From NCBI GenBank assembly GCA_044892525.1, contig CM097885.1:190216001-190280000 (forward strand): a stretch of DNA of 64,000 nt, given 5' to 3'. Source of the DNA: Schmidtea polychroa. Taxonomy: Eukaryota. The notes under the pieces were generated by a model. The model had not been told where the DNA came from and made no database searches. It worked only from the letters and a program-made list of their open reading frames with translations. The position numbers and the translations under genes are program-made. This document shows, piece after piece, positions 16,814 to 42,439 of this stretch. Every line of letters begins with the position of its first letter. Positions within the stretch are counted from its first letter, which is position 1.

Positions 16814-17906
16814 TACATTCCTAGTGTGAGCTATTGTATAGAGTTTTAATGTTGATTTTGATTGTGTACTGCATTTAAGTCAGAAAGAGTGCCTGCTTAC
16901 ACAGCCCCACTGTGACCGCTACGACAAGCCTTACTGTTGTATGGAGTCGACATTCCACTGTCGACCTATAATAAGTAGATTGAGTCATAACGGAGGGGTT
17001 TTATCGACTCAACTCCATGGCAGAACCATGAAGTGGACGACCTCCGATGACCGAACAGCAAAAATTACATATAGACACTGGCATAGATACTGCATGGCTG
17101 CGTGCTAGTGATTTTAAATTGTAGTTGCATAGTTGAACGCAGAACTGAATAGAGACGCAGATAAATCAATGCGTCTATGAACACTCTTACATTCAACACA
17201 AAAGCAAAAAATATTTAAAAATTGTTATAAATTGTAATCGAATCAATAAACATAAACATAGTATATAATAACAAAGGCTTACTATCGAGGGTTTTCTTCA
17301 AATGAATTTATTACAAAAAGTAATTTGGCATAAAGAATGTTTTTGTCACTAAAATGCATCGGTATATATACCTATTTTTGTGTGTGCAATACATGTGTAT
17401 GTATTGATGCATTAAAACAAACTCGAATTCTTTCTATTCTGGAATTTTCTATTTTTGATGATTTTAATGACAATTTTAGTGCCATAATTTTTATTCTTTA
17501 ATTATTTTTTGTTAAATTTGCCTCCATGATGGATTTGCAGCAATTCCAGAACATTCCATATTAAATTAAAGTTAATTTTTATTTTAATGATGTTTTTCCT
17601 AAATTCTTTTTTCAAATTTTTATTTTTAAAACTAATTAGTTTATTTTTATCAACTTTTGTTGATTTACATAACTTTTATGATGGATGCCGCCATTTTATA
17701 ATTTGTCTGGAATTTCTTCTAGAATTTAGTATTTTACTATATCATTATATATATCATTTTCTATATCATTCGAGTCTGTTTTCTGTACTTTTATGTTTCT
17801 CTGTTGTATTTGAGTTAGCTTTCTTGCAATACTTCTTGCATTTGTGAGATTTTAGTTAATTTCAGTGTTTTTATTTTTTGTTGTCTTTCTCTTTGTTAAT
17901 ATGGTT

Positions 17907-20106
17907 TATTTGATGTTTTTTATCTTTATATTTAACTAAACTTATTGCTATTATTGCGTGCTATGTACCAACACACTCTAGTCACAAAATAAAGTTTTGG
18001 GTCTAGAAATCAGTTCTAGCCCAACAAATTGAAGAATCTCTTTTGGTTCAGTTTTGGTCATTTTCTTGATGTTTGCATTTTTCGGTCGCAATAGTATAGT
18101 TTCTGCAGAAATCTCATACCATTCGTTTGATTCCCATAATCTAGGGCTATAATATAGAACTAGCGCTAAAATTGCTACTGTATTATTTATTTTTATTCTC
18201 TGAATTAATCTACTTCTATTTAAGCAAGGATGGGGAGTCGATTGGAAAACGATCGACTCCGAATCTCGACTCCTTTCAGTTTCATTAAGGCACTACTTGA
18301 TTCCGAAAATTGTTCACTGAAAAATTTGTTAACCTTTGAAATTTGATTGTCAAAATAAGTTAATTTTTTTAGATAGTTGTTCTACGTTACTCCGATAGAA
18401 GAAGCTTCAGGATATTNNNNNNNNNNNNNNNNNNNNNNNNNNNNNNNNNNNNNNNNNNNNNNNNNNNNNNNNNNNNNNNNNNNNNNNNNNNNNNNNNNNN
18501 NNNNNNNNNNNNNNNNNNNNNNNNNNNNNNNNNNNNNNNNNNNNNNNNNNNNNNNNNNNNNNNNNNNNNNNNNGTATCCAAGAAATTAGGTTAAACATAA
18601 TTAAATTAAAATAAAAATAAAACAAAACAAATTTAAGAATAAAATAGAATAGGATATAAGAAAAATAAAAAATTAGAAAATAAGAGTTAAAACAAAAAAT
18701 AAGGAAAATTGAAATAGGACAATAGAATGACAAAAAAATAACGTAAAATGTAGTAAATAATAAAGAAATTAAAGAAAATAAATAAAAAACACAATAAAAA
18801 TAAAGAAAATAGGAAAAAATAACTCAAAACCAAGAAAAATAAATTAAAGCAATAAAATTAAGCGGCACTCAATTCTGATTGGTCCGCACACATCAAAAAT
18901 TAATATATAAGGAAACACAAAAATTATAAACTTACAGTTAAACAACCAACTTTACAGGTAAGATAAATTTTAACAGTAACAGTTAAACAACCAACTTTAC
19001 AGGTAAACAGCAGCAACGTACGAGAATCAATCTAGAAACCAGGAGATATTGTCAAACAGTTAACAATCGACGTAAATTTCGAGTAACCATTTATTCGATT
19101 CGATACCTTCCGACTCAGCCTATAAATCTATACAAATTACTTGGTAAGGAATTTTCGATTTATGCTTTTATCTAAGTAATAGTAGTCATGTAATTTTATG
19201 AAATAATTATAATTTAAACTGAAAATAGTTTTTTCTTTTCGTTTGATTCCTAATGATAAATTTGCTAATTAGATGATTTAGTTATTTAATAAATGAATTA
19301 TTATGAACTTTTTATGATTGATTTTCATGCATTATTATTTAATGATTATAAATTTCCGAGAAACGTGGCGTTGAGAAACTCCATGTCATGGTATGAGGTG
19401 CCTTCGGGAGCTCAGCCGGTGGACATGGCGTTTTTCAATCACGCAGCTGATTCGGGCCGTAATGTGGGGGCTTCCTCACGGGTCCGTCGTTGAAGATGCG
19501 ACTAAAATATGTGAACAATACTGTAGAGAGATGGTAACTATCAAGCAATGGGAAGTGTAGTCATATGAGGAAAAATCTTGTTCGAGAGTTCGCACAGTGA
19601 TTGAGGGCGTCATACTATTGTCTTTGTCAAATTGAAATTGGTACTATCATCTGAAGATCTATACAGGATTTTCCGTTAAATCAGTCTGGACATCATTTGT
19701 AGCATATTATCTGCGTTCATGATTCCACTCGAAATTATTCCTGAAACCTTCAGCCTAAGGATCTTCACAACTGCTACTTTCATCATCTATATCCATCACG
19801 TGCAATCAACTTTGCTGCGTCTCTCTAAAAACCTACTTGTGGTGAATTGTGACAAACAAATAGTTCTCAAAAATAATAAACCATAAAATAATAAGGAATC
19901 TAGTCAGGAAAAATGTATTTATAAAAACAATCAAACATGTCATTCCCTTGTATATCGAATACCAAACGTTTGTGGCAACTGATGCAAAGTTGGGATGGGA
20001 GGTAACTGATCCGACAGACCCTCCATGGGAATAAAATCCGAGTCTTAGAGATGTCATAGAGGATGATGAAATATCCGCATTTCGTCGAATTGTATTTCCA
20101 GCGATA
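17907..20106 (+). repeat. Direct repeat copy 1 (of 29929-32034)
   Basis: Matches copy 2 from TATTTGATGTTTTTTATC to TATTTCCAGCGATA. Only two substitutions were noticed by eye. A 157-N gap replaces the 63-nt (TA)n-containing stretch of copy 2. Confidence 0.97.
18417..18573. other. Assembly gap (N run)
   Basis: Run of N, corresponding to 30439-30501 in the second repeat copy. Confidence 1.
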
Positions 20107-20227
20107 ATAATAAAATTAAAGATATAAATAAAGTAACTTTAATAATGGAGAAATAAGATAAAAGTAAAATAAAGTATAACGATTTAAAAGGAAAATGTTT
20201 GATGAAACAACCACTAATTAGTTATGT

Positions 20228-20740
20228 ATGACTAAAACATTTTTTTTAATAGACATGACGGAATTCGTGGACCAGATTCAACAACTAATCAACTTCATAA
20301 ACATCGAGAATAACTCCCTTAAAACGCTGACACAAAAGAGAGAAAGAATTAACATCATACTACTCCAAGCAATCGGGCAAACACCAGTCGTCCCCAACCA
20401 CATGTTATTAGCTGCAGGACTAAGTCACCCAGATGGGAAGATAAACCCTGAAACCGTGTATCAATGGTATCAAGAGAGATTGAACCACCCAGCATTAAAT
20501 CTTGATTATCAACGTATAAAAGATCCATTAAGTACCATATCAGATACAATCGAGCGAAAAATACAAGAAAAACTGACCCTACTACGAACTTGTCTTGCTT
20601 GTAAACGTCGTCCTATTCGCGTACTGTTCTTGCCGTGTGGACACCTCAGTCACTGCGAAGAATGTGTGAACAACTTAAAACGATGCACGATATGTAAGCA
20701 TGAGATAAAAGAAACTCATATGGTTTATTATGGTGAATGA
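20228..20740 (+). CDS. IAP-type C3HC4 RING protein without BIR domains (putative E3 ligase)
   Basis: C-terminal CLAC..VLFLPCGHLSHCEECVNNLKRCTIC..I (20591-20695) preceded by a coiled-coil-like IERKIQEKLTLLRT. AATAAA downstream near 20856. Confidence 0.85.
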   Translation: MTKTFFLIDMTEFVDQIQQLINFINIENNSLKTLTQKRERINIILLQAIGQTPVVPNHMLLAAGLSHPDGKINPETVYQWYQERLNHPALNLDYQRIKDPLSTISDTIERKIQEKLTLLRTCLACKRRPIRVLFLPCGHLSHCEECVNNLKRCTICKHEIKETHMVYYGE

Positions 20741-20963
20741 ATAGTTAAAGATACAGTAACATCTATGAACATTGAATTAATACGGGCGATCGAATGAGAT
20801 AAGTGTAATTGATGTGTGAAATTTTATTAAAGTTTTAATTTTTATTTTTATGACGAATAAATTTTTGTTATGAACTAAGTAATTATGGCTTTTAATTCTA
20901 TTTTTTTTTTGAATCAAACGAAAAGAAAACCGAACTAACGTGGAATTAGTCCCAATATAGGCT

Positions 20964-21918
20964 GTAAGGGTACAAACCGAGCCACCTTCGGGCGGTACGT
21001 TCTATCATACGAAAAACCAATTGGGAGGGGATAACCGATCAACCCAAGTAAGAAGCGTAGGGCGGGGTATCATCGCATATGATGAGAAGTTTCTGCGGCA
21101 TGTCTGATCACCATGCCAATGTAGAAATGGATCATCGCGATCGTCGTGCGTTTTGAGCAAGGGGGAAAGGGGACACACTCCCGAGCGGTAAAGATTAAGT
21201 CAACAAATTAAAAATAGACAGAGAAAATGATAATTCAGGGTAAAAGAGGAAAAGAGCAGTAGAAGCATGCAGAGTGGGGAATATTAAAGCCGAGCTGTTG
21301 AATAGTCCAGCCGGTCAAGGAAAATGAAAACTGAGCTGTGAAAAGTCCAGCCAGTTCGGAGATATTAAGATCGAGTTGTTGAATAGTCCAACCGATCAGA
21401 AGGAAGAAGATTGAGCTGTTGAATAGTGCCAGCCAGTCGTAAGATCGAGTTGTTGAATAGTCCAACCGATCAGAAAGAGGAAGATTGAGCTGTTGAATAG
21501 TGCCAGCCAGTCGTAAAGGCCTAGAAAAGCGAGAGATAGCAGTTGAGCTACAATGAGATAATATTTAAATTAATAGTGAAATGGAATATTAAAGCTAGCT
21601 AGAAACAAATTGAATGTAATTACGAAAATTTGAGTTTAGAGAGGAAATAAACGAGCTCGTGGAAAGGATGATAGGATTATAATGAAAAAGGAAGGGGAAG
21701 AAGGAAATGAATTAAAGAGATAATGGAAAATAAAGAATAGGTGAAATGATGATAATGAGTAAAGAGGAAAGTAACTAACTAATTAAAGGGATCCCAGTGA
21801 AGTAGAGAAACCCTACGAAATATTTTTGTTTTTGGTTAAATCGGGAAAATACATTTTTATTGGTTCCAGAGTAGAACCGAGCGAGATAATAGTAAATACG
21901 AAAAGTAAAATAGCGACA
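20964..21918 (+). mobile_element. Putative single LTR of the Gag-Env element
   Basis: Starts TGTAAGGG, contains a tandem enhancer-like array and AATAAA, and ends GCGACA directly followed by TGGCGC (weak PBS-like). It lies just upstream of the gag leader. There is no second copy in the window to confirm the ends. Confidence 0.4.
21292..21514 (+). repeat. Tandem array of GAG(C/T)TGTTGAATAGT(G)CCA(G/A)CC cores
   Basis: Six cores, including a 74-bp higher-order duplication (21367-21440 and 21441-21514). Confidence 0.9.
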
Positions 21919-22882
21919 TGGCGCAAAAGGATTAGAAAAACGAAGGGGGGTAACAAGCAGAGACCGACAACGACCTATTTATATTATAATTGATAGCGAA
22001 TAGATAATTATTACGACTTTATAGATAATTGTTACTACCCCATATAGATAATTTAAAATCGACGAAAAACGGGCTGATGGGAAATTATAACCCGCGGAAA
22101 GGATTTCACAAAAGATAGGGGAAGCACAAACAGAAACCTAAAAGGTGTCTGTGTTTGAATGTTGCAGAAAGAATGATGAAGTCGTGTAAGCAGATGCAAC
22201 ACGAGATCATTTTTTCATTTTAGATATCAAATCAAGCCAGCCAATCAAGCCAATCCAGAACCTGTACAAAAGGAATTCGAGGAAATCGACAATCGACCAA
22301 GAATAAATCCATTCAGAACCCGCACCAAGAAACCCAGCAACCGGAAGATTCCAGAACGGAGGAAGATACAGATAGCGACATCTCCAACTTCGAACGAATT
22401 ACCGATATATTCAACCTCATAGTATTAGCAGCCATCTGCCAAGGACTAGTAAATCCCCTCAGAATCTCAGTAGCAGATTCATACAGGATACTTTTCGAAG
22501 GAAACGCAATCAGATCCGAACTCTTCCGGTTCAGTAGCCGCTAATTACAAAGAAGCGTAAGAAAGGAATCACGGATAAACCCCATCTCAGATCATCAAGT
22601 AAGTCAGGCGACGTATTATTTTCAGGAGACGAATTACAACAACTCAAAAGAGGACGATCTATTAAACATCAAAGAGGAATATCACAAGGAGCAAGAAGAA
22701 CCAATCAAGTACCTATATTTGACCAAGAAAATCTCGGATACACCCCTAGTCGATCTCGAAGCAGGGAAAGTCTGTCCGATATCACTAACAGTTTAGCAAC
22801 GTCAACCGAAGAATTATCAGCCCAAAGTTTAGTCACATCGTTAGACAATTTAAAAGAAACAGACGAATCTAGAACACCAATC

Positions 22883-24847
22883 ATGACGAATGTCGTAAAA
22901 ACCGACGAGTATAAAGAGAAGTTCAGAGGAGAACCGTTCAATGGAAATGCAAACAAGTTAGCAACGTTCATAACAAATTTTGAAGTTTATATCACCGTGT
23001 GTGGATGGACACCCGAAGCAATTAGCAAAAGGATGCCGTTGTTTTTGTGCGATAGCGCATTAGAAGTATATCTAGAAGCTAAAGAGAGAGATACGAAATT
23101 AGAGAAGTGGGAAGATATCAAAACATTCTTGAAGAAAACCTTCGGAGCCAGTAAGCCAATCAACCAGGCGTGGGGCGAACTAGCAAATAGGAAACAAAGA
23201 GCGAACGAATCGATAACATTATATGCCAGTGAATTACGAAGGTTAGCGAAGAAAGCAATGAATGGGAAATTACCCGAGGAAAATCTGATCGGCTATTTCA
23301 TAGAGGGATTACGCCGAGAGGAGGTAAGAGCCTCAGTAGGTTGTCAAATGTGCAAAACGCTAGAGGAAGCCATAGACTGGGCTACAAGATGCGAGCTCCA
23401 CCTTCCAGCTCAAATGAATATTATGCAAGAGGATGGGAGGATAGCGACAGCAATAGCGAAAGCGGATAACGGAGATAACAACAATCAGGAACCGAAAATG
23501 AATCAATTTATACCAGGAGCGCATCAAATTTTTAAACCACCACAAGGACGATCAAATGGGAATAATGGTAATCGTAACAACTTGAATAATGAGAACAATT
23601 TTAATAATCGACGAAATATGAACGATAACAAGCAGTGCCGAACATGTGGTAAACCAGGACACTGGGACAGAGATTGTTATAGAAACGCAAATTGTAATCG
23701 TTGCGGACGACGTGGACATACGGAAAATAGATGCCAGTTGAGAGGTTGTTTTAACTGTGGTCAGCCAGGTCACATCTCCAGAGACTGCCGAGAAAGGGGC
23801 CAACCACAACGACCACCACAACGAAATACTAATTACATGTCGAACCCGCAACGACACAGTAACCCTAGCGAAGGAAAACAAATGAACGTTATGCAGGAAA
23901 TCTCACAAATGAAACAGATGATGCAACAAATGATGAGACCAAGACAAGAACCAGCACCACAACAAACCCAGAATATACGCATGATGAGGAGTACCGAAAA
24001 TCTCAATAGTTATGAAGTACATCAACATGTACAAGAATGGCAAAGACTACAGGCCGAGGAAGAGAGGATAAAACAAGAACGCAACCAACAACGACAAGAA
24101 CAACCATTGCGAATAAATATGATGAAGTTAGTAAAAGACATGAAAAGCCAGTACTGTTACAATTACGGGAAATACCCAAGGATAGTACCTATGACTGAAC
24201 CAGAAAAGGTAAAAGAAACAACAACGGAAACGAAAACAGAGAACTCAACCACGATCTTAAAAGGGAACCAGAGAATTAAGAAAATATTCTGGAAAAAGAT
24301 AAAAGATAAAATAGAAAAGAAACATGAAGAAACGGAAATAAGAATAAAAGAGGAAAACAACCAAAACAAGGAGCAAATCAGTCAGCTAAACCACCAAATG
24401 CTACAAGAATTGGAACCAGAAGAAACAACGATATTTGAAAGAAGGAAACTAAAGCGAGTACCACGGATGAGGAATCTGCGAATCAACATGATGAAAAGGA
24501 CAGAAGATGCGACATCGTCAGACGAAGAGGAAGACTATGTGAGCAGTTTGGGTGGAGAAATACTACAGCTAAACGAAACTAGCGAACCTCCAAAGGGGGA
24601 AATCAAAGAGGAAGAAAGCGAAAGCGAGATAACCAGTGAAAGTGAAGACGAGGATATCGAAATAAAGTTGAGAAAAGCGAGGGAGGAAACGATAAAACAA
24701 GTAGCTGAAATACTCCCGGTGGTAGTGAGAAACCAAGAGTTCATCGATGTAATACCATTCAGGCGATTCGTACAAAAAGTGATGACATTGGAAAGAAACG
24801 AGAAAGATTTAATACCAAGCGAAGAAAAGTTGATAATAAAAAAGTAA
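22883..24847 (+). CDS. Ty3/Gypsy-type Gag (capsid plus three CCHC knuckles) with a long Q/E/K-rich extension
   Basis: Retrotransposon capsid pattern (FNGN..F..NFE..W..L..F..L..RKQ..ES...Y..EL..L....FIEGL). Knuckles CRTCGKPGHWDRDC, CNRCGRRGHTENRC and CFNCGQPGHISRDC. The frame is open back to 22538. Confidence 0.95.
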   Translation: MTNVVKTDEYKEKFRGEPFNGNANKLATFITNFEVYITVCGWTPEAISKRMPLFLCDSALEVYLEAKERDTKLEKWEDIKTFLKKTFGASKPINQAWGELANRKQRANESITLYASELRRLAKKAMNGKLPEENLIGYFIEGLRREEVRASVGCQMCKTLEEAIDWATRCELHLPAQMNIMQEDGRIATAIAKADNGDNNNQEPKMNQFIPGAHQIFKPPQGRSNGNNGNRNNLNNENNFNNRRNMNDNKQCRTCGKPGHWDRDCYRNANCNRCGRRGHTENRCQLRGCFNCGQPGHISRDCRERGQPQRPPQRNTNYMSNPQRHSNPSEGKQMNVMQEISQMKQMMQQMMRPRQEPAPQQTQNIRMMRSTENLNSYEVHQHVQEWQRLQAEEERIKQERNQQRQEQPLRINMMKLVKDMKSQYCYNYGKYPRIVPMTEPEKVKETTTETKTENSTTILKGNQRIKKIFWKKIKDKIEKKHEETEIRIKEENNQNKEQISQLNHQMLQELEPEETTIFERRKLKRVPRMRNLRINMMKRTEDATSSDEEEDYVSSLGGEILQLNETSEPPKGEIKEEESESEITSESEDEDIEIKLRKAREETIKQVAEILPVVVRNQEFIDVIPFRRFVQKVMTLERNEKDLIPSEEKLIIKK

Positions 24848-26374
24848 ATGGAAAAAATGAAGCAGGTCGATACCACTCGATATGTAATAAAAATCGGAAC
24901 GAGTAGAGGACTTGAAAGAATGTGGATTAAAAATACAGTCACTGACGAACTTTTCGATTGGATACGAGAACATTTGGGAAGTTCGAGAAAGAAAGAATAT
25001 CTGTATCAATACCAAGGAGAACAGATCAAACCAGATATGCACTTAGTGGATGCACTAATATGGCCAGGAGAAACGCAAATACTGAAGTTGCACAAAGAAA
25101 AACAACCAGCTAACCTGTACGATTGGGCTAAAGATGCCAAGGCGGAATATGATTTTAATATCAAATTGAAATTAGAACAAATAAAGCAATGTACTCTGAG
25201 ACGAAACCTGGACAAGCTGATCAAACAAATTCAAGAACAAGTGGAAGATAACTGGGATTTACTCATCACCAGACGAGCCCCAGCCATGTACGAACTAATG
25301 AGCCGGTTGCAAGATACAGAATTGCTCCGAATGAGTGATTGGAGAACCATAAATTTGATCCACAAATATGGAAGGTTAAAGGAAACCCAGCCGCAGAGGT
25401 TGGAAATAACCATATGGTTACCGAACGAAGAGAAACGACGAATAAAAATGAGCAATCAGAGTACAGTGGATGATTTGGTATCAAAGATAAACCAAGAGAT
25501 AACGGAAAAGGTACGTAGCGAAAGTAGTGACGGTATGGTGGATGATGTAGTCATGATGTACGACAAAATAATATTACGAGCGGAAGACGACACCTCGTTG
25601 AGCGAAATGGGTATGTGGGACGATCATCAGATAATCAGGATAGTACCAATGGATGAATTTCGAACAAGAGATGTAACGTATCAAAAAGAAATACGAGACC
25701 GGATGAAAGCGTTATATCAAAAATCTACAGAAATAATTGAAATTCACCAACGATGGTTAAAAGAAAAGGAACTACAAGGAAAAATCACGAAACTAAGCAC
25801 CAGATCCTGCAGACGAACCCCATGGGAAAGAGTGTGGAATACAGAAAATAAGGAATGGGAAATCCGGAAAGGAATCTTCGTAGAAACAGACATTGGTGAG
25901 ACAGAAAGTGAATCGGAGGAAGAAGAAAAGGAACCTCCAGAATATGAAGAGGAAGCAAGGGGACAGACATCAGATGACGAAAGCGAGACGGACGTCACGT
26001 CAGAAAGCGAAAATGAAGCAAGACATATTCATGCAATGCGGAAAAAGGAACGTGAATATGCCGATATGGACGGCGAGGAAGCGACAGAAGCAAGAGAACG
26101 AGAAGAGAAAGAAAGATATAAACAATTAGGCGATATTTTAGCAATAGGAGCGAAAAATCAAAAACGCCAGGTAGTAGCGCTGGCTAATATCATCTTAAAG
26201 ACATCAGAGAACATCCACAATCTGAGAGGAATGGCAAAGGCAATAGAGGAATACCGGCAATATAATGAATATTCAGAACAGTTAGGAAATGGAGAAATCA
26301 GGAATGGGCACAAGACACCCAGGAGAGGTATCACATCCGAATCAAGTATCCGGACAAGAGCATTGAAGAACTAG
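24848..26374 (+). CDS. ORF2: two ubiquitin-like domains and an acidic region, in frame with Gag after a single TAA
   Basis: UBL-like segments RYVIKIG..QGEQIKPDMHL..ILKL (24878-25096) and RLEITIWLPNEEKRRIKMSNQSTVDDL..DDTSLSEMGM..IIRIV (25397-25648). Confidence 0.7.
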   Translation: MEKMKQVDTTRYVIKIGTSRGLERMWIKNTVTDELFDWIREHLGSSRKKEYLYQYQGEQIKPDMHLVDALIWPGETQILKLHKEKQPANLYDWAKDAKAEYDFNIKLKLEQIKQCTLRRNLDKLIKQIQEQVEDNWDLLITRRAPAMYELMSRLQDTELLRMSDWRTINLIHKYGRLKETQPQRLEITIWLPNEEKRRIKMSNQSTVDDLVSKINQEITEKVRSESSDGMVDDVVMMYDKIILRAEDDTSLSEMGMWDDHQIIRIVPMDEFRTRDVTYQKEIRDRMKALYQKSTEIIEIHQRWLKEKELQGKITKLSTRSCRRTPWERVWNTENKEWEIRKGIFVETDIGETESESEEEEKEPPEYEEEARGQTSDDESETDVTSESENEARHIHAMRKKEREYADMDGEEATEAREREEKERYKQLGDILAIGAKNQKRQVVALANIILKTSENIHNLRGMAKAIEEYRQYNEYSEQLGNGEIRNGHKTPRRGITSESSIRTRALKN

Positions 26375-29300
26375 AAGTGCATCCAACAACGAAAATTAGG
26401 GAATTAAAAAAGAAATTAGCATATGAAACCCCATTCCATCTGCAACTATTCGGAAAATCACTAGACGATAATGTAGACGTCGGAATAACACCCATGAGAT
26501 TAGAAGAGACTAATGTGTTAACAATGGCGGAAACGTTGGGAAAACCGTTGAAAAGGAAAAGCAAAATTAATAAACCAACAAAAGGTAGTTTGAGTACTCC
26601 AATTCCAAACAAAGCCCCAAGTAAATCTAATGAAACTGAAGAAGTTGAAGAGATTATCCTAGAAGATAGTTACGATGAACCAGGAGAAAGATCACCACTA
26701 TTAGTGAGATGGCCAACAGGAGCCGAAATATGGACCAACAACCAACCATCAACAAGTTATCAACAACCAACGAAACTGAACATCAAGGAAATCATCGACA
26801 ATACTACGGAAACCGAAACGGATGAACAATTCCAGAAGCAAAGAGAACCAACAAAAATAACACCGGAAGGTCAAACCGATAAAATAATAGATGAGTGGAA
26901 TGAGTGGCTGAGAAATAACGATAGTTCATTACCCAGAACGGATAACGAAAGAAATCCGCAATATGAAAATACCAGAGAAGCTGGAACGATGATGGAAAAA
27001 CGGGCAAAAGGAAGACCTAAGAAACAAGGAGAGAAATCTGAGTTCAAAACCAAGGAACAAGTAAAACAAGAACAAGGACAAGTTCGATTGGAAAAGTTAG
27101 ATAAAATAGTATGGGATCTAAAGGAAGCCCAACCAACGATCGGAAGAGGAGAAAAATGGATACGAGAATTGATCAAAGATATGTTAATAATAACAAATCC
27201 ACAACTTAGACGCTTGTGGCAACGGAAAGTAGCCAGTGTAGAAGCTAGACAATTATGGCACATCGTATCGGGGATAATCCCAAAGCTAATCAAAGAAAAA
27301 ACGAAAACTACCAAAACGGATTGGGATGAAACCAAGAGAGTGATTGAACAGCTCACGACAAATGCAAATGATGACGAACATCATCTAGTGGTAATCACTT
27401 ATTTGATGTATAATTTGATGGGACTAGCTGCGAGAAAAATACCAAATAAACAGTTTGCAAATCACGTGGAAATGACTGCTTCAGTCATTGAAAACACTAT
27501 TGAACCACATATTATTCGTGCCGGAGGATGGAAAAGACTTATACAAGCGCCACGAAAAAATGAGCAAGGAAGGTCGATGCAAGTTAGATTGAAAAAGCTG
27601 TTAAATGAAATAGAATGGGAACTACCGGTGAAAGACCCAGCAAGCAGAAAAGCATCAATAAATTCGTTAATGATGACTATGATGATATGGATGTTGTGCA
27701 CAAGTGGAGCAACGGGTTTTACCATCTACGATTGTGATAATATGATAATGAGAGATAAATACTCATTGAGAGATATAGAAGAATGCAGACAAGCATCACC
27801 CAACAAATTGGACATAGTAAGAACAAAAGTTACCTACCATGTATATCAAGAATCAGATTTCATCAGAACGCAAGCAAGGGAATGCGTAGTATCAAAAAAG
27901 GTACTCGCATATTACTGTGGACAATATTCGTATTCAACTCTTATACTACCCGGTCTGGATAAAGAAATCGTATCAATACAAAGAGAGGACTGTAAAGAGC
28001 TATTTAGAATCGGAGCGCTAAAAATGCATAACGGAGTGACGATACACGGACAAACTGGAATGATTAAAACCGAAAGTGTTTACGTATCCGGAAAAGTAAA
28101 GTCATCAGAAGGGTCATGTAACGGAGGTACGTATACGATCCGAGGCGAGGTAATATCGGGAGTAGTAGTAATCGAGTCCTATACGGTTGAATTAAAAGAA
28201 TATGAAGCGCAATTTGACGCAAATAATTACCAAATGAAGACCAACCCGGCATGTAGGGCTACAGAAAACGTATGCAGGACAGGAGTGTCAACTATAATCT
28301 ATGAAGCTAACACGCAAAAATGCCGACTCCAACTGTTAAAAAGTGCTTTATTCAATGAAGTAAAAGGAGAAATTTATGAGAACGAGAATGACGAGGATGG
28401 AAACGAAAGAGTGAGAATGCGAAATGGAAAACCAATGCCACCATCCCCCAGAGAAAAAAGACTCTCGACGCAGAAAACACCAACAGCATTAATAACCGAC
28501 GACCCAGATCTAGGTATGAGATTCATTAAAGAGAAAGAAACCACCAAATGCGACAGTATAGTATATAAAACCAATTACGCTGGTATCTATATGTCAAGAC
28601 AAATAATCGATAGAGCAGTGGGAAAGATAGCAGCGGAGGACGTGAAATTATACTTATATGCGAATAATAAAATGGATTTTTTATTTCATCGTGGACAAAC
28701 GACCCTACAAAAAGTATATTACGATCTGATACAAAACGATTGTTCATTGAATAAAGAAATACTGAAAATAAAGCTAGCTATTGCGATAACGCACCCGGAT
28801 AACACGATGCCATCACTCCCATTACCAGACGGACATTTTGGTAGAATGGTAGGAGAAGTGATGTACACATACCAGTGTACCAAGACGTATGCACGAATGC
28901 CAGAAAAATCCATACTACCCGAAAAGAGATGTGCAAATGAATTAGAAATCCGCTATAAAGGACAAAATCGATTCGTCCAACCCGTCACTAGAATTATGAA
29001 TCCAGTGGGTTTCTACCCAAATCTCTTTAACTGTTCTAATGCATACGGACCATTGTATGAAAGACCCGATGGAAAATGGATGATGTTACCGGGAAAAACC
29101 ATATCCGAGGAGCCCAAGAAATTTGGATTGATAGAACTCGCCACAGAGCTGGATTTCAAACCTATAGACGTGTCAAACGGTGGTATGTATTCCCCAGAAG
29201 ATTTAGAAACAGCTCGGCTTAACGTATTATTCCCAGCAAGGCGAGAATCTATTTTGTCCAATATGGTAACAATAACTGGGGGAACGAATTACCAATCAGG

Positions 29301-29961
29301 CCCAAACTATGAACTACTGCTGTCACCAGACCATTTCCAACAAGCAACCTCAAATATGATGAAAGCAATGTGGGGAAGATTCTTAGTTTTTGGACAAATG
29401 ATGGCCGGAATATTGGGGATCATACTCATAATTCAGATCGTCAGAGTAATACTAACACAAATGTTAGCCTGTTTTGATATATACAAGCGGGAAAAGAAAG
29501 TTAACTGGAAAATGATAGTAGGCTTTCTACCATTTTTAGCTAAAACCATGGTATTACATGGTCACTCAAAAGACATTCATCGGATAAAGCGATTGATCAA
29601 AATACTAACAAAGATTAAAGGAACCGACGAAGAAGTAGGCAGACGATTCCGGAAAGTAATGTACGATGAAGCAACAAGACGACAATTGAAAAAGAATAAG
29701 CCAAAATTTTTGGACCGATTCAGAAGTCAATCATCTAACAGCGATAGTGACGACGATAATAACGGGAACGATAAATGTCTATATCCAAACAGAAACCCAA
29801 ACAAAAAACCGATGGAAACAGCACCGTATTGGGAAAAGGAAAAGACAAACACCTGGATCGCCAACGGAAGCTATATACCACCGGATATCGTGGGACCACA
29901 AGCCGCTTTGACCATGACACAGAATATGTATTTGATGTTTTTTATCTTTATATTTAACTAA
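26269..29961 (+). CDS. ORF3: ubiquitin-like domain, Bcl-2-like domain, signal peptide and chuvirus-like class III fusion glycoprotein
   Basis: The frame is open from 26269. UBL at 26326-26526. BH1/BH2-like helices ending IEPHIIRAGGWKRLIQ (about 27148-27552). Hydrophobic signal ending GATG|FTIYDC (27718). Cys-rich ectodomain, REKR site, and TM segment WGRFLVFGQMMAGILGIILII from 29371. The last residues come from the flanking repeat. Confidence 0.85.
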   Translation: MFRTVRKWRNQEWAQDTQERYHIRIKYPDKSIEELEVHPTTKIRELKKKLAYETPFHLQLFGKSLDDNVDVGITPMRLEETNVLTMAETLGKPLKRKSKINKPTKGSLSTPIPNKAPSKSNETEEVEEIILEDSYDEPGERSPLLVRWPTGAEIWTNNQPSTSYQQPTKLNIKEIIDNTTETETDEQFQKQREPTKITPEGQTDKIIDEWNEWLRNNDSSLPRTDNERNPQYENTREAGTMMEKRAKGRPKKQGEKSEFKTKEQVKQEQGQVRLEKLDKIVWDLKEAQPTIGRGEKWIRELIKDMLIITNPQLRRLWQRKVASVEARQLWHIVSGIIPKLIKEKTKTTKTDWDETKRVIEQLTTNANDDEHHLVVITYLMYNLMGLAARKIPNKQFANHVEMTASVIENTIEPHIIRAGGWKRLIQAPRKNEQGRSMQVRLKKLLNEIEWELPVKDPASRKASINSLMMTMMIWMLCTSGATGFTIYDCDNMIMRDKYSLRDIEECRQASPNKLDIVRTKVTYHVYQESDFIRTQARECVVSKKVLAYYCGQYSYSTLILPGLDKEIVSIQREDCKELFRIGALKMHNGVTIHGQTGMIKTESVYVSGKVKSSEGSCNGGTYTIRGEVISGVVVIESYTVELKEYEAQFDANNYQMKTNPACRATENVCRTGVSTIIYEANTQKCRLQLLKSALFNEVKGEIYENENDEDGNERVRMRNGKPMPPSPREKRLSTQKTPTALITDDPDLGMRFIKEKETTKCDSIVYKTNYAGIYMSRQIIDRAVGKIAAEDVKLYLYANNKMDFLFHRGQTTLQKVYYDLIQNDCSLNKEILKIKLAIAITHPDNTMPSLPLPDGHFGRMVGEVMYTYQCTKTYARMPEKSILPEKRCANELEIRYKGQNRFVQPVTRIMNPVGFYPNLFNCSNAYGPLYERPDGKWMMLPGKTISEEPKKFGLIELATELDFKPIDVSNGGMYSPEDLETARLNVLFPARRESILSNMVTITGGTNYQSGPNYELLLSPDHFQQATSNMMKAMWGRFLVFGQMMAGILGIILIIQIVRVILTQMLACFDIYKREKKVNWKMIVGFLPFLAKTMVLHGHSKDIHRIKRLIKILTKIKGTDEEVGRRFRKVMYDEATRRQLKKNKPKFLDRFRSQSSNSDSDDDNNGNDKCLYPNRNPNKKPMETAPYWEKEKTNTWIANGSYIPPDIVGPQAALTMTQNMYLMFFIFIFN

Positions 29962-32034
29962 ACTTATTGCTATTATTGCGTGCTATGTACCAACACACTC
30001 TAGTCACAAAATAAAGTTTTGGGTCTAGAAATCAGTTCTAGCCCAACAAATTGAAGAATCTCTTTTGGTTCAGTTTTGGTCATTTTCTTGATGTTTGCAT
30101 TTTTCGGTCGCAATAGTATAGTTTCTGCAGAAATCTCATACCATTCGTTTGATTCCCATAATCTAGGGCTATAATATAGAACTAGCGCTAAAATTGCTAC
30201 TGTATTATTTATTTTTATTCTCTGAATTAATCTACTTCTATTTAAGCAAGGATAGGGAGTCGATTGGAAAACGATCGACTCCGAATCTCGACTCCTTTCA
30301 GTTTCATTAAGGCACTACTTGATTCCGAAAATTGTTCACTGAAAAATTTGTTAACCTTTGAAATTTGATTGTCAAAATAAGTTAATTTTTTTAGATAGTT
30401 GTTCTACGTTACGCCGATAGAAGAAGCTTCAGGATATTCAAATGTATTCATCTTATAAATAAATATATATATATATATATATTGTTGGGCTGAGTCGAAG
30501 GGTATCCAAGAAATTAGGTTAAACATAATTAAATTAAAATAAAAATAAAACAAAACAAATTTAAGAATAAAATAGAATAGGATATAAGAAAAATAAAAAA
30601 TTAGAAAATAAGAGTTAAAACAAAAAATAAGGAAAATTGAAATAGGACAATAGAATGACAAAAAAATAACGTAAAATGTAGTAAATAATAAAGAAATTAA
30701 AGAAAATAAATAAAAAACACAATAAAAATAAAGAAAATAGGAAAAAATAACTCAAAACCAAGAAAAATAAATTAAAGCAATAAAATTAAGCGGCACTCAA
30801 TTCTGATTGGTCCGCACACATCAAAAATTAATATATAAGGAAACACAAAAATTATAAACTTACAGTTAAACAACCAACTTTACAGGTAAGATAAATTTTA
30901 ACAGTAACAGTTAAACAACCAACTTTACAGGTAAACAGCAGCAACGTACGAGAATCAATCTAGAAACCAGGAGATATTGTCAAACAGTTAACAATCGACG
31001 TAAATTTCGAGTAACCATTTATTCGATTCGATACCTTCCGACTCAGCCTATAAATCTATACAAATTACTTGGTAAGGAATTTTCGATTTATGCTTTTATC
31101 TAAGTAATAGTAGTCATGTAATTTTATGAAATAATTATAATTTAAACTGAAAATAGTTTTTTCTTTTCGTTTGATTCCTAATGATAAATTTGCTAATTAG
31201 ATGATTTAGTTATTTAATAAATGAATTATTATGAACTTTTTATGATTGATTTTCATGCATTATTATTTAATGATTATAAATTTCCGAGAAACGTGGCGTT
31301 GAGAAACTCCATGTCATGGTATGAGGTGCCTTCGGGAGCTCAGCCGGTGGACATGGCGTTTTTCAATCACGCAGCTGATTCGGGCCGTAATGTGGGGGCT
31401 TCCTCACGGGTCCGTCGTTGAAGATGCGACTAAAATATGTGAACAATACTGTAGAGAGATGGTAACTATCAAGCAATGGGAAGTGTAGTCATATGAGGAA
31501 AAATCTTGTTCGAGAGTTCGCACAGTGATTGAGGGCGTCATACTATTGTCTTTGTCAAATTGAAATTGGTACTATCATCTGAAGATCTATACAGGATTTT
31601 CCGTTAAATCAGTCTGGACATCATTTGTAGCATATTATCTGCGTTCATGATTCCACTCGAAATTATTCCTGAAACCTTCAGCCTAAGGATCTTCACAACT
31701 GCTACTTTCATCATCTATATCCATCACGTGCAATCAACTTTGCTGCGTCTCTCTAAAAACCTACTTGTGGTGAATTGTGACAAACAAATAGTTCTCAAAA
31801 ATAATAAACCATAAAATAATAAGGAATCTAGTCAGGAAAAATGTATTTATAAAAACAATCAAACATGTCATTCCCTTGTATATCGAATACCAAACGTTTG
31901 TGGCAACTGATGCAAAGTTGGGATGGGAGGTAACTGATCCGACAGACCCTCCATGGGAATAAAATCCGAGTCTTAGAGATGTCATAGAGGATGATGAAAT
32001 ATCCGCATTTCGTCGAATTGTATTTCCAGCGATA
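29929..32034 (+). repeat. Direct repeat copy 2 (of 17907-20106)
   Basis: Near-identical to copy 1, 2106 bp. Confidence 0.97.
30483..31052 (+). mobile_element. About 570-bp element bounded by 19-bp inverted repeats (solo LTR or MITE), inserted next to (TA)n; duplicated at about 18574-19124
   Basis: TGTTGGGCTGAGTCGAAGGGTATC at the left and GATACCTTCCGACTCAGCC at the right. Internal ATTGG box, TATATAA, and a duplicated ACAGTTAAACAACCAACTTTACAGGTAA. Confidence 0.6.
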
Positions 32035-32315
32035 GTTAATGAATTTCCAACTCGATATAGACAGTGGGCATGTTGATGATGATAAAATCCATGAGGGGAG
32101 TAGAAATTATAGCTTGAATAGTTGACCAGTTTGTCTACGAAACGAATTACATCCAGTAATAGCGGTACGCACCATCTGCCTATGCAAAATTTCCACGAGA
32201 GATAGAAATTCAACACGGTGTAATATAACATCTGATGATTCATGCCTGCTGCCAAATAGGATAAGAGTCTCACGAAGTGAGTACCCGCACACATGTGTAA
32301 ATGCACACATTGCAA
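31761..32315 (-). CDS. Orphan ORF (184 aa), His/Tyr-rich with a hydrophobic C-terminus
   Basis: Open frame that crosses the right end of repeat copy 2 and is truncated in copy 1. No family recognised. Confidence 0.35.
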   Translation of the reverse strand: MQCVHLHMCAGTHFVRLLSYLAAGMNHQMLYYTVLNFYLSWKFCIGRWCVPLLLDVIRFVDKLVNYSSYNFYSPHGFYHHQHAHCLYRVGNSLTIAGNTIRRNADISSSSMTSLRLGFYSHGGSVGSVTSHPNFASVATNVWYSIYKGMTCLIVFINTFFLTRFLIILWFIIFENYLFVTIHHK

Positions 32316-33133
32316 GTTCTAATAGCCAAAGTCCACATGCTGGTGCTCACCAATAATAACACGGATATCACTAGCCATAATTCTACGAGTCTATCTTCCA
32401 GGTGATACGTTCCTTGAGATCGCATCGTCATCTAACCCGATAGTAGATAATTCACCGCGAACGGCTAACTTGAGAAAAGTCCACCGGGTGTGTCAGATAA
32501 AAATCTCGGCTATTTACCGAAAGCACTAGACATGAGTGATGATAACACGAGTCACCAACAACTCAATAATTAATTTTAAAATAGTAACTAAATGTGAGAT
32601 TTGAAAACAAAATTATAATAAATTATAGACAATATAATCGAAAGCCTAAATAAAATACAAACAAAATGCAATTCAATTAATCCAAGTCTATTACTGGGAC
32701 TGCAAAAATTTAGTATTTTTACTTAATGATGAATTAAAACCAACTTATCTAATTATCTATAAAATCATTATAATGATTAGCTAAATTTTCACTTAGTAAT
32801 TATTTAGTTCGGGTTGAATTTTCAATGCTATTTACCCTCTTCAAGAAACATTTCCGTCATCAATAATCCCTCTTAAACATGTAATTTTCATTTTCTTTAA
32901 TAATGATGGACAATCTTCGTTAAGTAAAGCCTAATGTTTTCAGTTGATTTTCTAGTGGATAAATACCCAGAGTACGCATAGGTTGATGGCATCGGAAATC
33001 CCTCTTGATAAAAATCCGTTTTCCTTTTCCTGTAAAAATGTCTTATATTGATTAACGAATGGTGGCGAAAAATGATGATTTTCTAAATTTGATCTATCCC
33101 ATTTAGTGTTATTATTCTTCTTAGCTAGCAGAC

Positions 33134-37953: not shown

Positions 37954-39150
37954 CATAGCTCTCCAACTGAAACGAACTCTATCAAGAAGTTGACTTTTAC
38001 CTTTTCGTCTCCAATTATCTGTCTTCGAAAAATTACCTCATCTCCTTGATATGAAATCGATATTTTCTTGGTGTATGGTAGTGTCTGTAATAACCATCGT
38101 GATACAAAATATGTACCCCAACTCCGAAGTACATATTGGTTTACGACTACTCATAACGAGTAATCCTGTTGTGCTGTTAGATCATCGAAAACTTTCACTC
38201 TCTCATCGACATTTAGTTCGAATGTTGAACAATATTCTCCACAAAATGAGAAACTAAACCTTGTTCTATTATCGCAAGTGGTTGATATTTGAAAACTATT
38301 ATGCGTTCGCGCAAAGTGCAAATGTTCAATTTGTACTGCTACTGGATAAAACATTGCTGGTACTGCAGCCTGTATTGTAGTCATTAGTAAAATACAGATA
38401 ACTAAGAACGTGACGCCTTTCGGTACACCTCTAGACCGTAATGGTTATCGGTTCTTCTAAGTATCCCATATAATAGGTTTCGGTTTCTCCTTGAGTTTTG
38501 GAATTTCTGTCTTTTGTTTACTCAATTGTTCTTTATCCTGAACTGGTACTGTACACTTTTACATCGATTTGTATGTATCATAATAGGTTCCGCTTTCCGA
38601 TTAGCTACTAACTATAATATCAAATTCGTGTCAGTGGTTTTTAGGACTTCATATGGACCTTTGAAATTTCGCATTGACTTTGGGGATAAGCCTTTCTTAT
38701 TGTAATGGCTTTCCAACATAACTTAATCTCCCACCAATATTTGCTGATCTTTTGCTTTGCTATTTCGACGCTTCTTGATTATATTTGATGTTGAGACTAG
38801 CTTTTGTCCATGTCTCTTGCATTCGCTCTCTCATCTCCAAGAGATAGTCCACTTGGTCTAGGTATTGTGTAGCTTTCGGATAGAACAACAAATCTACCGG
38901 CATTTTACTCTGTCTTAAATACATCAGGTAAAATAGAGTTTGTCCCATACCTCCGTGAACTGCATTTCGATATGCGAATAGACATGATGGAATATGTACA
39001 TCTCAATCAGTTTGGGCTGAATTGACATATGATGCGATCATATTAGCTAAAGTTCCGTTGAACCTTTCGACTAACCCATTAGTTTGTGGGTGATATGGCG
39101 ATATGTTTAGTTTCATAATACCAAAACAGCTCTTTGTCGCATTGCGTACC
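37954..39150 (-). pseudogene. Ty3/Gypsy integrase remnant plus a downstream signal-peptide ORF interrupted by the hAT
   Basis: SPYHPQTNGLVERFNGTL..LFAYRNAVH. The downstream frame VTFLVICILLMTTIQAAVP.. (one internal stop at 38151) continues in frame across the hAT TSD into 30238-30000. Confidence 0.85.
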
Positions 39151-39189
39151 AGATCAAATGGAACAATACAATACCGCATGAAAATGAAA

Positions 39190-42340: not shown

Positions 42341-42439
42341 CTGATTGGTTTAAGTTTACCTTCTGCCGTTCTGTGATTAAGACTTGCACTAATTCCAATG
42401 TCCGATGCATCCGTACATACAATGAATATGCGTTGCGAA

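What the first reader, a model, noticed from the sequence alone, without database searches (positions are those of the whole stretch)
20228..29961. Pol-less Gag/Env retroelement with an anti-apoptosis and ubiquitin toolkit
Across about 7 kb of coding sequence there is Gag, three UBL-like domains, a Bcl-2-like domain and a complete fusion glycoprotein, with a RING gene adjacent. There is no D(S/T)G protease, YxDD RT, RNase H or integrase motif, and no obvious in-frame scar where pol was lost. It retains the parts needed to build an enveloped RNA-carrying particle and keep the producer or recipient cell alive, while relying on a helper for replication. This would be a satellite or defective virus-like system, or a domesticated capsid-fusogen RNA-transfer module (inference). 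From memory, giant planarian Gypsy elements (Burro) were reported with an anti-apoptotic domain; that link needs verifying. I do not recall this pol-less, chuvirus-env combination being described.
Basis: partly seen in the sequence, partly recalled or inferred. Interest (0 to 1): 0.92.

Follow-up and report, generated by a model that had tools for sequence, protein, structure and literature searches.

The report
Pol-deleted copy of Burro-like retroelement
This is one young copy of a known kind of giant flatworm-type retrovirus-like element (Gag, ubiquitin-like and Bcl-2-like domains, a viral fusion protein) that has lost its enzyme half, most likely by a deletion; it does not look like a new kind of polymerase-less system.

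Summary
There is a Gag with three zinc knuckles, a Monjiviricetes-type fusion glycoprotein (Pfam E 6e-69) and an IAP-type RING (E 8e-12). A Bcl-2-like domain and three ubiquitin-like segments are weak singly but consistent across tests. No protease, RT, RNase H or integrase lies between two 2.1-kb direct repeats (17907-20106, 29929-32034; 2 mismatches in 2043 comparable bases).

The order Gag, ubiquitin-like, Bcl-2-like, Env is the published layout of the planarian 'Burro' giant Ty3/gypsy elements (PMC6431247) and of flatworm GAG-ENV-POL elements (PMC13524379). In those, Env sits in frame between gag and pol.

All 13 relatives with at least 200 residues after the Env membrane anchor carry a protease in the same reading frame. 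Several continue into RT, RNase H and integrase. The window's reading frame follows its closest tail relative up to the edge of the 3' repeat, about 25 residues before that relative's protease. It then runs 11 codons into the repeat and stops. No purine tract precedes the repeat.

So there is a scar, and the copy is best read as a deletion derivative, probably private to this locus. The RING gene belongs to the element. Domestication is unsupported. A pol-less subfamily could not be tested without the genome.

The parts
17895..17900 (.). Candidate target-site duplication, copy 1 (GTTAAT). It lies 6 nt before the start of the shared repeat.
   Evidence: The same 6-mer directly follows the 3' repeat. 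Chance is about 0.4% in random junction pairs of this window. An alternative 3-bp GTT lies directly next to both repeats.
17907..20106 (+). 5' long direct repeat (LTR-like). It contains an N run that was left unfilled.
   Evidence: blastn against the 3' copy: 510 nt at 99.6% and 1533 nt at 100%. No other copy in the window.
20228..20740 (+). Accessory ORF of 170 aa with a C-terminal IAP-type RING and no BIR domain.
   Evidence: zf-C3HC4_3 E 8.4e-12. cIAP2 RING E 5.4e-11, then cIAP1, ML-IAP and XIAP. Aligns over aa 17-162 with the N-terminus of the RING-Gag fusion proteins P0004 and P0012, E 1e-15.
20741..22882 (+). Leader between the RING ORF and gag, with tandem repeats at about 21278-21516 (74-nt unit).
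   Evidence: Repeats. No Pfam domain in any stop-free piece of 50 aa or more. No Rfam family and no tRNA. Relative L002 also has tandem repeats just upstream of gag.
22883..29961 (+). Polyprotein gene from gag to env, listed as one part. It reads as three abutting or overlapping ORFs: one in-frame stop, one frame change, and one large 3' deletion that removed protease through integrase.
   Evidence: ORF list and translations. Pfam. Colinearity with relatives.
23036..23317 (+). Gag capsid-like domain.
   Evidence: PF03732 Retrotrans_gag E 3.9e-10, aa 52-145. 40-54% identity to the Gag proteins P0002-P0013.
23636..23788 (+). Three CCHC zinc knuckles.
   Evidence: PF00098 E 2.3e-10. Motif count.
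24869..25111 (+). Ubiquitin-like segment 1 (plausible, not confirmed on its own).
   Evidence: No Pfam or PDB hit alone. The low-confidence single-sequence model shows a beta-beta-alpha start. Contributes to the three-segment profile that finds ubiquitin folds.
25394..25663 (+). Ubiquitin-like segment 2 (plausible, not confirmed on its own).
   Evidence: Weak hits to beta-grasp families: PI3K_rbd E 0.024-0.054 and UN_NPL4 E 0.37. Beta-beta-alpha start in the model. Profile result.
26326..26541 (+). Ubiquitin-like segment 3, directly upstream of the Bcl-2-like region.
   Evidence: PF00240 ubiquitin E 0.0075. The best PDB sequence hits are ubiquitin variants, E 0.11-0.21, over almost the full length.
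27094..27636 (+). Bcl-2-like helical domain.
   Evidence: Pfam Bcl-2 E 0.028-0.072. Conserved in L001, L003 and L005, with invariant Y, L and G-G-W columns. The profile search of PDB returns mostly Bcl-xL, E 0.007-0.1. The AF2 model is all-helical with pLDDT 52, and its 50 best Foldseek matches are all Bcl-2 family.
27658..27717 (+). Hydrophobic signal-peptide-like segment between the Bcl-2-like domain and the Env ectodomain.
   Evidence: Read from the translation. Its function is inferred.
27718..29379 (+). Env ectodomain (Monjiviricetes-type fusion glycoprotein).
   Evidence: PF24664 E 5.9e-69. 948 library proteins at E <= 0.001. The nearest are 32-46% identical.
29380..29466 (+). Env membrane anchor.
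   Evidence: Hydrophobic stretch conserved with P0001 and P0037.
29467..29961 (+). Env cytoplasmic tail and linker. The frame ends 11 codons inside the 3' repeat.
   Evidence: 41% identical to P0037 over 227 aa, up to the edge of the repeat. In P0037 a retroviral protease begins about 25 residues further on.
29929..32034 (+). 3' long direct repeat (LTR-like).
   Evidence: The last 30 nt before it are 53% purine. The only purine run of 8 or more in the preceding 200 nt lies about 100 nt upstream.
32035..32040 (.). Candidate target-site duplication, copy 2 (GTTAAT).

Best explanation
The region is the inside of a 14.1-kb LTR-type retroelement (17907-32034). It belongs to the Burro-like group of GAG-ENV-POL Ty3/gypsy elements, the endogenous-retrovirus-like giants described from planarians.

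In the full-length family one long polyprotein reads, in order: Gag, coiled-coil spacer, ubiquitin-like domain(s), Bcl-2-like domain, internal signal sequence, class-III-like fusion glycoprotein, membrane anchor, protease(s), (ankyrin), RT, RNase H, integrase. Accessory ORFs lie upstream; here that is an IAP-type RING.

This copy has lost everything from just before the protease to the start of the 3' repeat. It therefore cannot make its own protease, reverse transcriptase or integrase, and it lacks a plus-strand primer tract. It is a young, defective copy. The deletion is most likely private to this locus, made at or after integration.

Shown: the domains, the repeats, the absence of pol, the colinearity with pol-bearing relatives up to the repeat edge, and the RING's membership of the element.

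Inferred: that the repeats are true LTRs; that the deletion is private; and the topology, in which Gag, the ubiquitin-like domains and the Bcl-2-like domain stay cytosolic, the signal segment acts as a tail anchor for the Bcl-2-like domain, and the Env ectodomain is translocated.
For: Repeats and age:
- The two 2.1-kb direct repeats differ at 2 of 2043 comparable bases and bracket the RING ORF, leader, gag and env.

Family layout:
- The domain order matches the published Burro description, including three CCHC knuckles, Ubi2/SUMO-like then BCL2-like then Env in frame, and tandem repeats (PMC6431247).
- GAG-ENV-POL order is reported for Platyhelminthes elements (PMC13524379).

Relatives carry pol:
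- The nearest Env relatives are polyproteins in which Env is followed by protease, and by RT, RNase H and integrase when the protein is long enough: P0017, P0021, P0026, P0029, P0032. With protease: P0001, P0018, P0019, P0023, P0030, P0037, P0045, P0079.
- Loci L002, L003 and L004 show gag, env, protease/ankyrin, then RT-RH-IN.

The deletion:
- The tail is colinear with P0037 up to the repeat edge, and the protease starts about 25 aa later in P0037.
- The frame stops 11 codons into the repeat, with no purine tract before it.
- No pol similarity inside the element. A Burro-like integrase fragment lies elsewhere in the window, so pol-bearing relatives live in this genome.
- A 6-bp candidate target duplication places the true 5' LTR start 6 nt before the shared repeat. 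This means the 3' copy is clipped, so the deletion post-dates cDNA synthesis.

RING:
- It is homologous to the N-terminus of RING-Gag fusions in relatives.
Against: - The repeats have no canonical TG...CA ends, and I recognised no primer-binding site next to the 5' repeat. They are called LTRs by position and duplication only.
- The target duplication is ambiguous: 6 bp offset by 6 nt, or 3 bp directly adjacent.
- Near-identical repeats and only two interruptions in 7 kb mean the copy is very young, so a large deletion had little time to occur.
- No other copy of this element from the same genome could be reached. The claim of a private deletion rests on the junction anatomy alone.
- No reference Burro sequence was available, so the link to Burro is by architecture and literature, not by alignment.
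- The middle ORF has no detectable homologue in any relative.
Confidence: 0.7

Rival explanations
1. It is a member of a propagating, non-autonomous pol-less subfamily. Such a subfamily would keep Gag, Env, the Bcl-2-like domain and the RING, and would be copied in trans by full-length Burro-like elements of the same genome: a 'satellite' of an endogenous retrovirus.
For: The repeats are about 99.9% identical and the 7-kb coding region is almost fully open, as expected for a recent insertion. Burro-like integrase fragments in the window show that potential helpers exist in the genome. Non-autonomous deletion derivatives are common among LTR elements (established knowledge).
Against: No purine tract precedes the 3' repeat. 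The reading frame has no stop of its own and ends by chance 11 codons inside the repeat. The 6-bp target-duplication reading implies the 3' repeat lacks its first 6 nt, which a copy made from a pol-less RNA would not show. No second copy was found in any collection, although the source genome itself could not be searched.
Confidence: 0.12
2. The apparent loss of pol is an assembly artefact. The assembler joined the env tail of a full-length copy to the 3' LTR through short similar sequence, or collapsed the repeat.
For: The window has three N runs, one of them inside the 5' repeat. Planarian-type AT-rich genomes with giant repeats are reported to be hard to assemble (PMC11410931). The bases on either side of the junction resemble the bases at the start of the 5' repeat, AATATG..TATTTGATG. 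Perfect identity of 1.5 kb between the repeats could also arise from consensus polishing.
Against: No N run lies at or near the junction. The flanks of the two repeats are otherwise unique, and a plausible target duplication frames the whole element.
Confidence: 0.13
3. It is a host-domesticated Gag plus Env module (a capsid-fusogen RNA-transfer system) kept by selection.
For: Long open frames for Gag and Env. Gag belongs to the Retrotrans_gag/PNMA-type capsid family, from which known domesticated genes derive.
Against: Near-identical long repeats still flank it and it sits among other transposon remains. The polyprotein is interrupted twice and ends inside the repeat. There is no close orthologue in 5.8 billion clustered proteins, and the best Gag hit is 54% identical. 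Without protease, the Gag-to-Bcl-2 part has no evident means of being processed.
Confidence: 0.03

Closest known systems
Burro / GYPSM1 giant Ty3/gypsy LTR retroelements of Schmidtea mediterranea and Burro-like elements of Dugesiidae (Jurka 2007; Grohme et al. 2018; Arkhipova & Yushenova 2019, PMC6431247)
   Same: Gag with Retrotrans_gag and three CCHC knuckles; a coiled-coil spacer; a ubiquitin/SUMO-like domain then a BCL2-like domain then a mononegavirus-like Env in the gag frame; RING/IAP-type apoptosis and ubiquitin motifs; upstream accessory ORF; tandem repeats; long LTRs; a very AT-rich host genome.
   Different: This copy is 14.1 kb instead of more than 30 kb. It has no protease, dUTPase, RT, RNase H, integrase, ankyrin, MATH or BIR. 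It has three ubiquitin-like segments where the literature describes one.
GAG-ENV-POL 'errantiviruses' of Platyhelminthes, Nematoda and Bryozoa with class III (gB-type) Env (eLife 2026, PMC13524379)
   Same: Env sits between gag and pol in a Ty3/gypsy element. The relatives found here (L002-L004, P0017, P0021, P0029, P0032) have exactly this order.
   Different: The window copy stops after Env. That paper does not mention Bcl-2 or ubiquitin-like domains (0 occurrences of 'Bcl-2').
Mosquito BEL/Pao and gypsy elements that captured a Chuviridae-like glycoprotein (Dezordi et al. 2020, PMC7642597)
   Same: An LTR retroelement carrying a glycoprotein of the same broad Pfam family as chuvirus glycoproteins.
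   Different: In those elements Env is a separate ORF after pol, in arthropods, and no apoptosis or ubiquitin domains are described. The window's nearest Env relatives are other gag-env-pol polyproteins. The roughly 650-aa stand-alone glycoproteins are only 22-27% identical.
Internally deleted, non-autonomous derivatives of LTR retroelements and endogenous retroviruses (general class; established knowledge)
   Same: LTRs and part of the coding region are kept, and the enzymes are lost.
   Different: Propagating non-autonomous families keep the primer-binding site and polypurine tract and occur in many copies. Here no polypurine tract is present and copy number is unknown.
Cellular and viral IAP RINGs and Bcl-2 homologues
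   Same: The RING is most similar to the cIAP2, cIAP1, XIAP and ML-IAP RINGs. The helical domain matches only Bcl-2 family folds.
   Different: No BIR domain accompanies the RING. The Bcl-2 likeness is below family thresholds in sequence, and no BH3-groove function has been tested.

Membership tests
Burro-like GAG-ENV-POL giant Ty3/gypsy elements | Long terminal direct repeats flanking the coding region | tested here: met
   2.1-kb repeats at 17907-20106 and 29929-32034, 2 mismatches in 2043 comparable bases. The termini are not canonical TG...CA.
Burro-like GAG-ENV-POL giant Ty3/gypsy elements | Gag with a Retrotrans_gag domain followed by two or three CCHC knuckles | tested here: met
   PF03732 E 3.9e-10, PF00098 E 2.3e-10, three knuckles.
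Burro-like GAG-ENV-POL giant Ty3/gypsy elements | Mononegavirus/Monjiviricetes-like Env placed downstream of gag and upstream of protease | tested here: met
   PF24664 E 5.9e-69 downstream of gag. Relatives show Env followed by protease. In the window the downstream partner is missing.
Burro-like GAG-ENV-POL giant Ty3/gypsy elements | BCL2-like domain directly upstream of Env, preceded by a ubiquitin/SUMO-like domain | tested here: met
   Bcl-2-like. Ubiquitin-like. Each test is below curated thresholds but all are mutually consistent.
Burro-like GAG-ENV-POL giant Ty3/gypsy elements | Protease, RT, RNase H and integrase | tested here: not met
   No Pfam hit, no motif and no tblastn similarity inside 17907-32034. 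The copy is therefore filed as a defective derivative, not a complete member.
Burro-like GAG-ENV-POL giant Ty3/gypsy elements | Sequence similarity to reference Burro1-4 / GYPSM1 | not testable with these tools
   No reference sequence is reachable. Grohme et al. 2018 is not held.
Propagating non-autonomous LTR retroelement family | Polypurine tract next to the 3' LTR | tested here: not met
   The last 30 nt before the repeat are 53% purine, and there is no purine run of 8 or more within about 80 nt of the repeat.
Propagating non-autonomous LTR retroelement family | Primer-binding site next to the 5' LTR | tested here: inconclusive
   The bases after 20106 are A/T-only. No tRNA gene is in the window to compare with.
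Propagating non-autonomous LTR retroelement family | Several copies with the same internal structure at different loci | not testable with these tools
   The source genome is not searchable. No close copies in the protein collection, JGI metagenome contigs or IMG/VR.
Domesticated Gag or Env host gene | Loss of LTRs and fixation as a single-copy conserved host locus | tested here: not met
   Near-identical repeats are retained. There is no close orthologue in the protein collection. Orthology itself is not testable here.
Non-retroviral endogenous chuvirus/mononegavirus element | Viral glycoprotein integrated without retroelement genes, or together with N or L genes | tested here: not met
   Env is in one coding run with a retroelement Gag and lies between long direct repeats. 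Pfam found no other RNA-virus domain in the ORFs.

The most novel reading that the evidence does not exclude
The pol-less form is not a one-off. It is the master or a member of a helper-dependent subfamily that keeps only the particle-building genes (Gag, Env) and the host-manipulating genes (IAP-type RING, ubiquitin-like and Bcl-2-like domains), and is copied by full-length Burro-like elements. This would be a 'satellite' of an endogenous retrovirus-like element in a flatworm genome.
Probability: 0.1. Interest if true: 0.6.

Novelty: new member of a known kind. Interest (0 to 1): 0.25.

Why it matters
The Burro-like family is remarkable: a retrovirus-like element that places a borrowed RNA-virus fusion protein, a Bcl-2-like domain and ubiquitin-system parts inside its polyprotein. 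That is already in the literature.

This locus adds four things:
- a clean, young, defective copy;
- independent profile and fold support for the Bcl-2-like call and for three ubiquitin-like domains rather than one;
- evidence that an IAP-type RING accessory ORF belongs to the family and is fused to Gag in some relatives;
- the observation that the Bcl-2-like domain sits directly before the Env signal segment.

It does not establish a new pol-less class. If genome-wide counts showed many copies with the same junction, it would be a useful example of a helper-dependent envelope-bearing retroelement.

Tried and rejected
Searches that found nothing usable:
- Word-indexed protein search with the middle ORF: no hit. 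phmmer and tblastn of the middle ORF, the Gag C-terminal half and the region upstream of the Bcl-2-like domain against all 165 fetched relatives and the ORFs of five loci: no hit. That part is lineage-specific or evolves too fast to trace.
- Single-sequence AlphaFold2 of the middle ORF: pLDDT 41, unusable for fold search. Only its secondary-structure pattern was used.
- PDB sequence searches with the Env part and with the single Bcl-2-like segment: nothing useful. Ubiquitin-like segments 1 and 2 alone: nothing useful.
- Rfam at gathering thresholds and tRNA scan over the whole window: nothing. The GC-rich patches in the leader and in the repeat remain unassigned.
- tblastx of the repeat, leader and flanks against the relatives' loci: no hit.
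- Close copies in JGI metagenome contigs and IMG/VR: none.
- Cluster names for relatives: uninformative. One is mis-binned as a Flavobacteriaceae MAG, and beetle 'Glycoprotein' entries appear for the distant stand-alone Envs.
- Grohme et al. 2018 is not held.

Considered and rejected:
- The missing pol was moved nearby by a rearrangement. The integrase-like fragments at 38486-39155 and 42448-42764 are short, lie partly on the other strand, have no matching repeat next to them, and no protease or RT of this family is in the window.

Not done:
- RING and Gag are one protein in relatives P0004 and P0012. I did not build a splice model that joins them in the window, because no tool predicts an intron there and no genomic locus of those relatives is available.
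- dN/dS was not computed, because no close paralogue DNA is available.

Slip to report: my first notebook entry copies the ORF bounds printed by the ORF listing. These coincide with the two interruptions of the polyprotein. I noticed this later, left the entry in place, and do not repeat those bounds in this report.

Full report
**What is there.** Window 20001-30000 stands out from its 25-33% GC surroundings. It has 37-41% GC and a strong purine excess on the + strand. It holds a 170-aa ORF followed by about 2.1 kb without long ORFs. Then come about 7.1 kb of + strand coding sequence that read as three abutting or overlapping ORFs. The coding run is interrupted twice: one in-frame stop and one frame change.

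Two direct repeats of about 2.1 kb bracket all of this, at 17907-20106 and 29929-32034. They differ at 2 of 2043 comparable bases. The 5' copy contains an N run, which I left alone. The whole unit is 14.1 kb. No second copy of the repeat or of the interior exists in the window.

**Domain calls.**
- Gag is solid: Retrotrans_gag E 3.9e-10 and three CCHC knuckles, with 40-54% identity to a set of Gag proteins.
- Env is solid: PF24664 Monjiviricetes_fusion E 5.9e-69. It has a hydrophobic signal-like segment, an ectodomain, a membrane anchor and a tail in one open frame. It gives 948 library hits.
- The small upstream ORF ends in a RING of the IAP type: zf-C3HC4_3 E 8.4e-12. The best solved-structure matches are the RINGs of cIAP2, cIAP1, ML-IAP and XIAP.
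- The Bcl-2-like call is below threshold in each single test but consistent across four:
  - Pfam Bcl-2 scores E 0.03-0.07 here and 0.00096 at the same position in relative P0020.
  - The segment is conserved in three relatives, with invariant Y, L and G-G-W columns.
  - In a profile search of PDB with those four sequences, most of the best 60 matches are Bcl-xL.
  - The AlphaFold2 model is all-helical (pLDDT 52, pTM 0.45). Its 50 best Foldseek matches in PDB are all Bcl-2 family, with probability up to 1.0 and TM up to 0.62, but E only 0.1-0.5.
- Of the three ubiquitin-like segments, only the third has its own support: Pfam ubiquitin E 0.0075, and ubiquitin variants as the best PDB hits.
- A profile of all three segments finds almost only ubiquitin-fold proteins: a redesigned ubiquitin at E 2e-4, then ISG15, RAD23, ubiquilin and UBL5. 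That is better than the third segment alone, so the other two add signal rather than dilute it. I treat three ubiquitin-like domains as plausible.
- No D[ST]G or YxDD motif occurs in any ORF.
- No Pfam domain appears in the remaining stop-free pieces.
- tblastn with pol-bearing relatives finds no pol similarity anywhere between the repeats.

**The RING gene is part of the element.** It lies inside the repeats. It aligns over nearly its whole length (E 1e-15) with the N-terminus of the predicted proteins P0004 and P0012, which continue into a Gag homologous to the window's Gag. In the window the two are separated by a leader with tandem repeats. Whether they are joined in transcripts was not tested.

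**What the relatives look like.** The nearest relatives of the Env-bearing ORF are long polyproteins, not stand-alone glycoproteins.
- Pfam shows Env followed in the same frame by one or two retroviral-type proteases, and then RT and RNase H, in P0017, P0021, P0026, P0029 and P0032. Four of these also reach integrase.
- Env followed by protease occurs in P0001, P0018, P0019, P0023, P0030, P0037, P0045 and P0079.
- Gag or CCHC motifs lie upstream of Env in P0019, P0030 and P0031.
- All 13 relatives that extend at least 200 residues beyond the Env anchor have a protease.
- Four genomic contexts (L001-L004, one ENA sample) show gag, a spacer ORF, env(+protease), protease/ankyrin, then RT-RNaseH-integrase over more than 13-17 kb.

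**Match to the literature.** This is the arrangement described for the planarian Burro/GYPSM1 elements. Those have Gag with three knuckles in S. mediterranea, a Ubi2/SUMO-like motif, BCL2-like, and an Env homologous to mononegavirus fusion glycoproteins. [quoted passage not shown] PR, dUTPase, RT, RH and IN follow, with BIR, RING-type and ankyrin motifs, accessory ORFs and tandem repeats (PMC6431247). GAG-ENV-POL elements are also reported from Platyhelminthes, Nematoda and Bryozoa (PMC13524379).

**Where pol went.** The window's Env tail aligns with its closest tail relative, P0037 (41% over 227 residues), right up to the edge of the 3' repeat. In P0037 the protease domain begins about 25 residues later. 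The window's frame has no terminus of its own. It runs 11 codons into the repeat and meets a stop there. The bases before the repeat are not purine-rich. So there is a scar: the interior has been cut from just before the protease to the start of the 3' repeat, taking the plus-strand primer tract with it.

**Is the deletion private to this copy?** The 6-mer that directly follows the 3' repeat (GTTAAT) also occurs 6 nt before the 5' repeat. Chance for this is about 0.4%. If that is the target duplication, the true LTR starts 6 nt before the shared part and the 3' LTR is clipped. A clipped 3' LTR would make the deletion younger than the DNA copy, and so private to this locus. A 3-bp duplication (GTT) directly next to both repeats is the alternative reading. 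It leaves the timing open.

**Most likely mechanism.**
- Family level, partly inferred: an LTR-driven transcript encodes a polyprotein. Gag, the ubiquitin-like domains and the Bcl-2-like domain stay cytosolic.
- The hydrophobic segment after the Bcl-2-like domain directs the Env ectodomain into the ER. After signal cleavage it could serve as the membrane tail of the Bcl-2-like domain.
- The anchor returns the chain to the cytosol for protease and pol. The RING accessory protein and the Bcl-2-like domain plausibly act on host ubiquitin and cell-death pathways.
- This copy: it could at most express RING, Gag and Env-containing products. It cannot process them with its own protease or copy itself.

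**Rivals.**
- A propagating pol-less subfamily (0.12). Its youth and intactness speak for it. The missing purine tract, the accidental stop and the clipped-repeat reading speak against it.
- An assembly mis-join (0.13). N runs in the window, a genome type that is hard to assemble, and short similarity at the junction speak for it. Unique flanks and a framing duplication speak against it.
- Domestication (0.03).

The source genome could not be searched. The protein collection holds nothing closer than 54% (Gag) or 46% (Env), and the scans of JGI metagenome contigs and IMG/VR found no close copy.

**Verdict.** It is a defective, probably one-off, pol-deleted copy of a known kind of element (Burro-like GAG-ENV-POL Ty3/gypsy), not a new pol-less system. 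Interest 0.25; new member of a known kind.

Noticed in passing
window 38486-39155 (- strand) and 42448-42764 (+ strand): Short integrase C-terminal fragments. The first is 50-58% identical, the second 30-50%, to the pol of the Burro-like relatives (L002-L004, P0017). No matching repeat lies next to them. They show that pol-bearing relatives of the element live in the same genome.
   Followed up: partly
window 41281-42468 (- strand): RNase H plus integrase zinc-binding remains of another, more distant Ty3/gypsy element (RT_RNaseH E 2.4e-18; about 25-39% identity to the Burro-like pols).
   Followed up: partly
window 4217-5539 (-), 46194-46760 (+), 54713-55147 (+), 61972-62676 (+): Other transposon remains: a DUF4371 ORF, two Tc1/mariner-type DDE_3 transposase pieces (one with HTH_Tnp_Tc3_2), and a hAT dimerisation domain. 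The window is largely a transposon landscape.
   Followed up: no
L001-L004 (relatives, ENA sample ERZ25039515): At 14 of 15 junctions between successive called ORFs of the relatives' polyprotein regions, the next ORF is in the +1 frame. One junction is in frame. This is far from random. It suggests either programmed +1 frameshifting, as known for Ty3, or a systematic indel error of that assembly. The window's single frame change goes the other way.
   Followed up: partly
window 20940-21200 and 31290-31420: Two GC-rich patches in otherwise AT-rich non-coding sequence, one in the leader and one inside the repeat. They have no Rfam match and no ORF, and their role is unknown.
   Followed up: no
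window 31764-32318 (- strand): A 185-codon stop-free stretch on the opposite strand spans the outer edge of the 3' repeat into the flank. It has no Pfam hit. It may be chance in this sequence, or an older sequence at the insertion site.
   Followed up: partly
window 21278-21516; L002 924-1222: Both the window element and relative L002 carry short tandem repeats (74-nt and 51-nt units) just upstream of gag. The sequences are unrelated. The literature figure for Burro also marks tandem repeats.
   Followed up: partly
window 18417-18573 versus 30439-30501: The N run in the 5' repeat is 157 bases long. The corresponding stretch of the 3' repeat is 63 bases and includes a (TA)n run. So the two repeats differ in length there, or the gap size is arbitrary. 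It was not filled.
   Followed up: no
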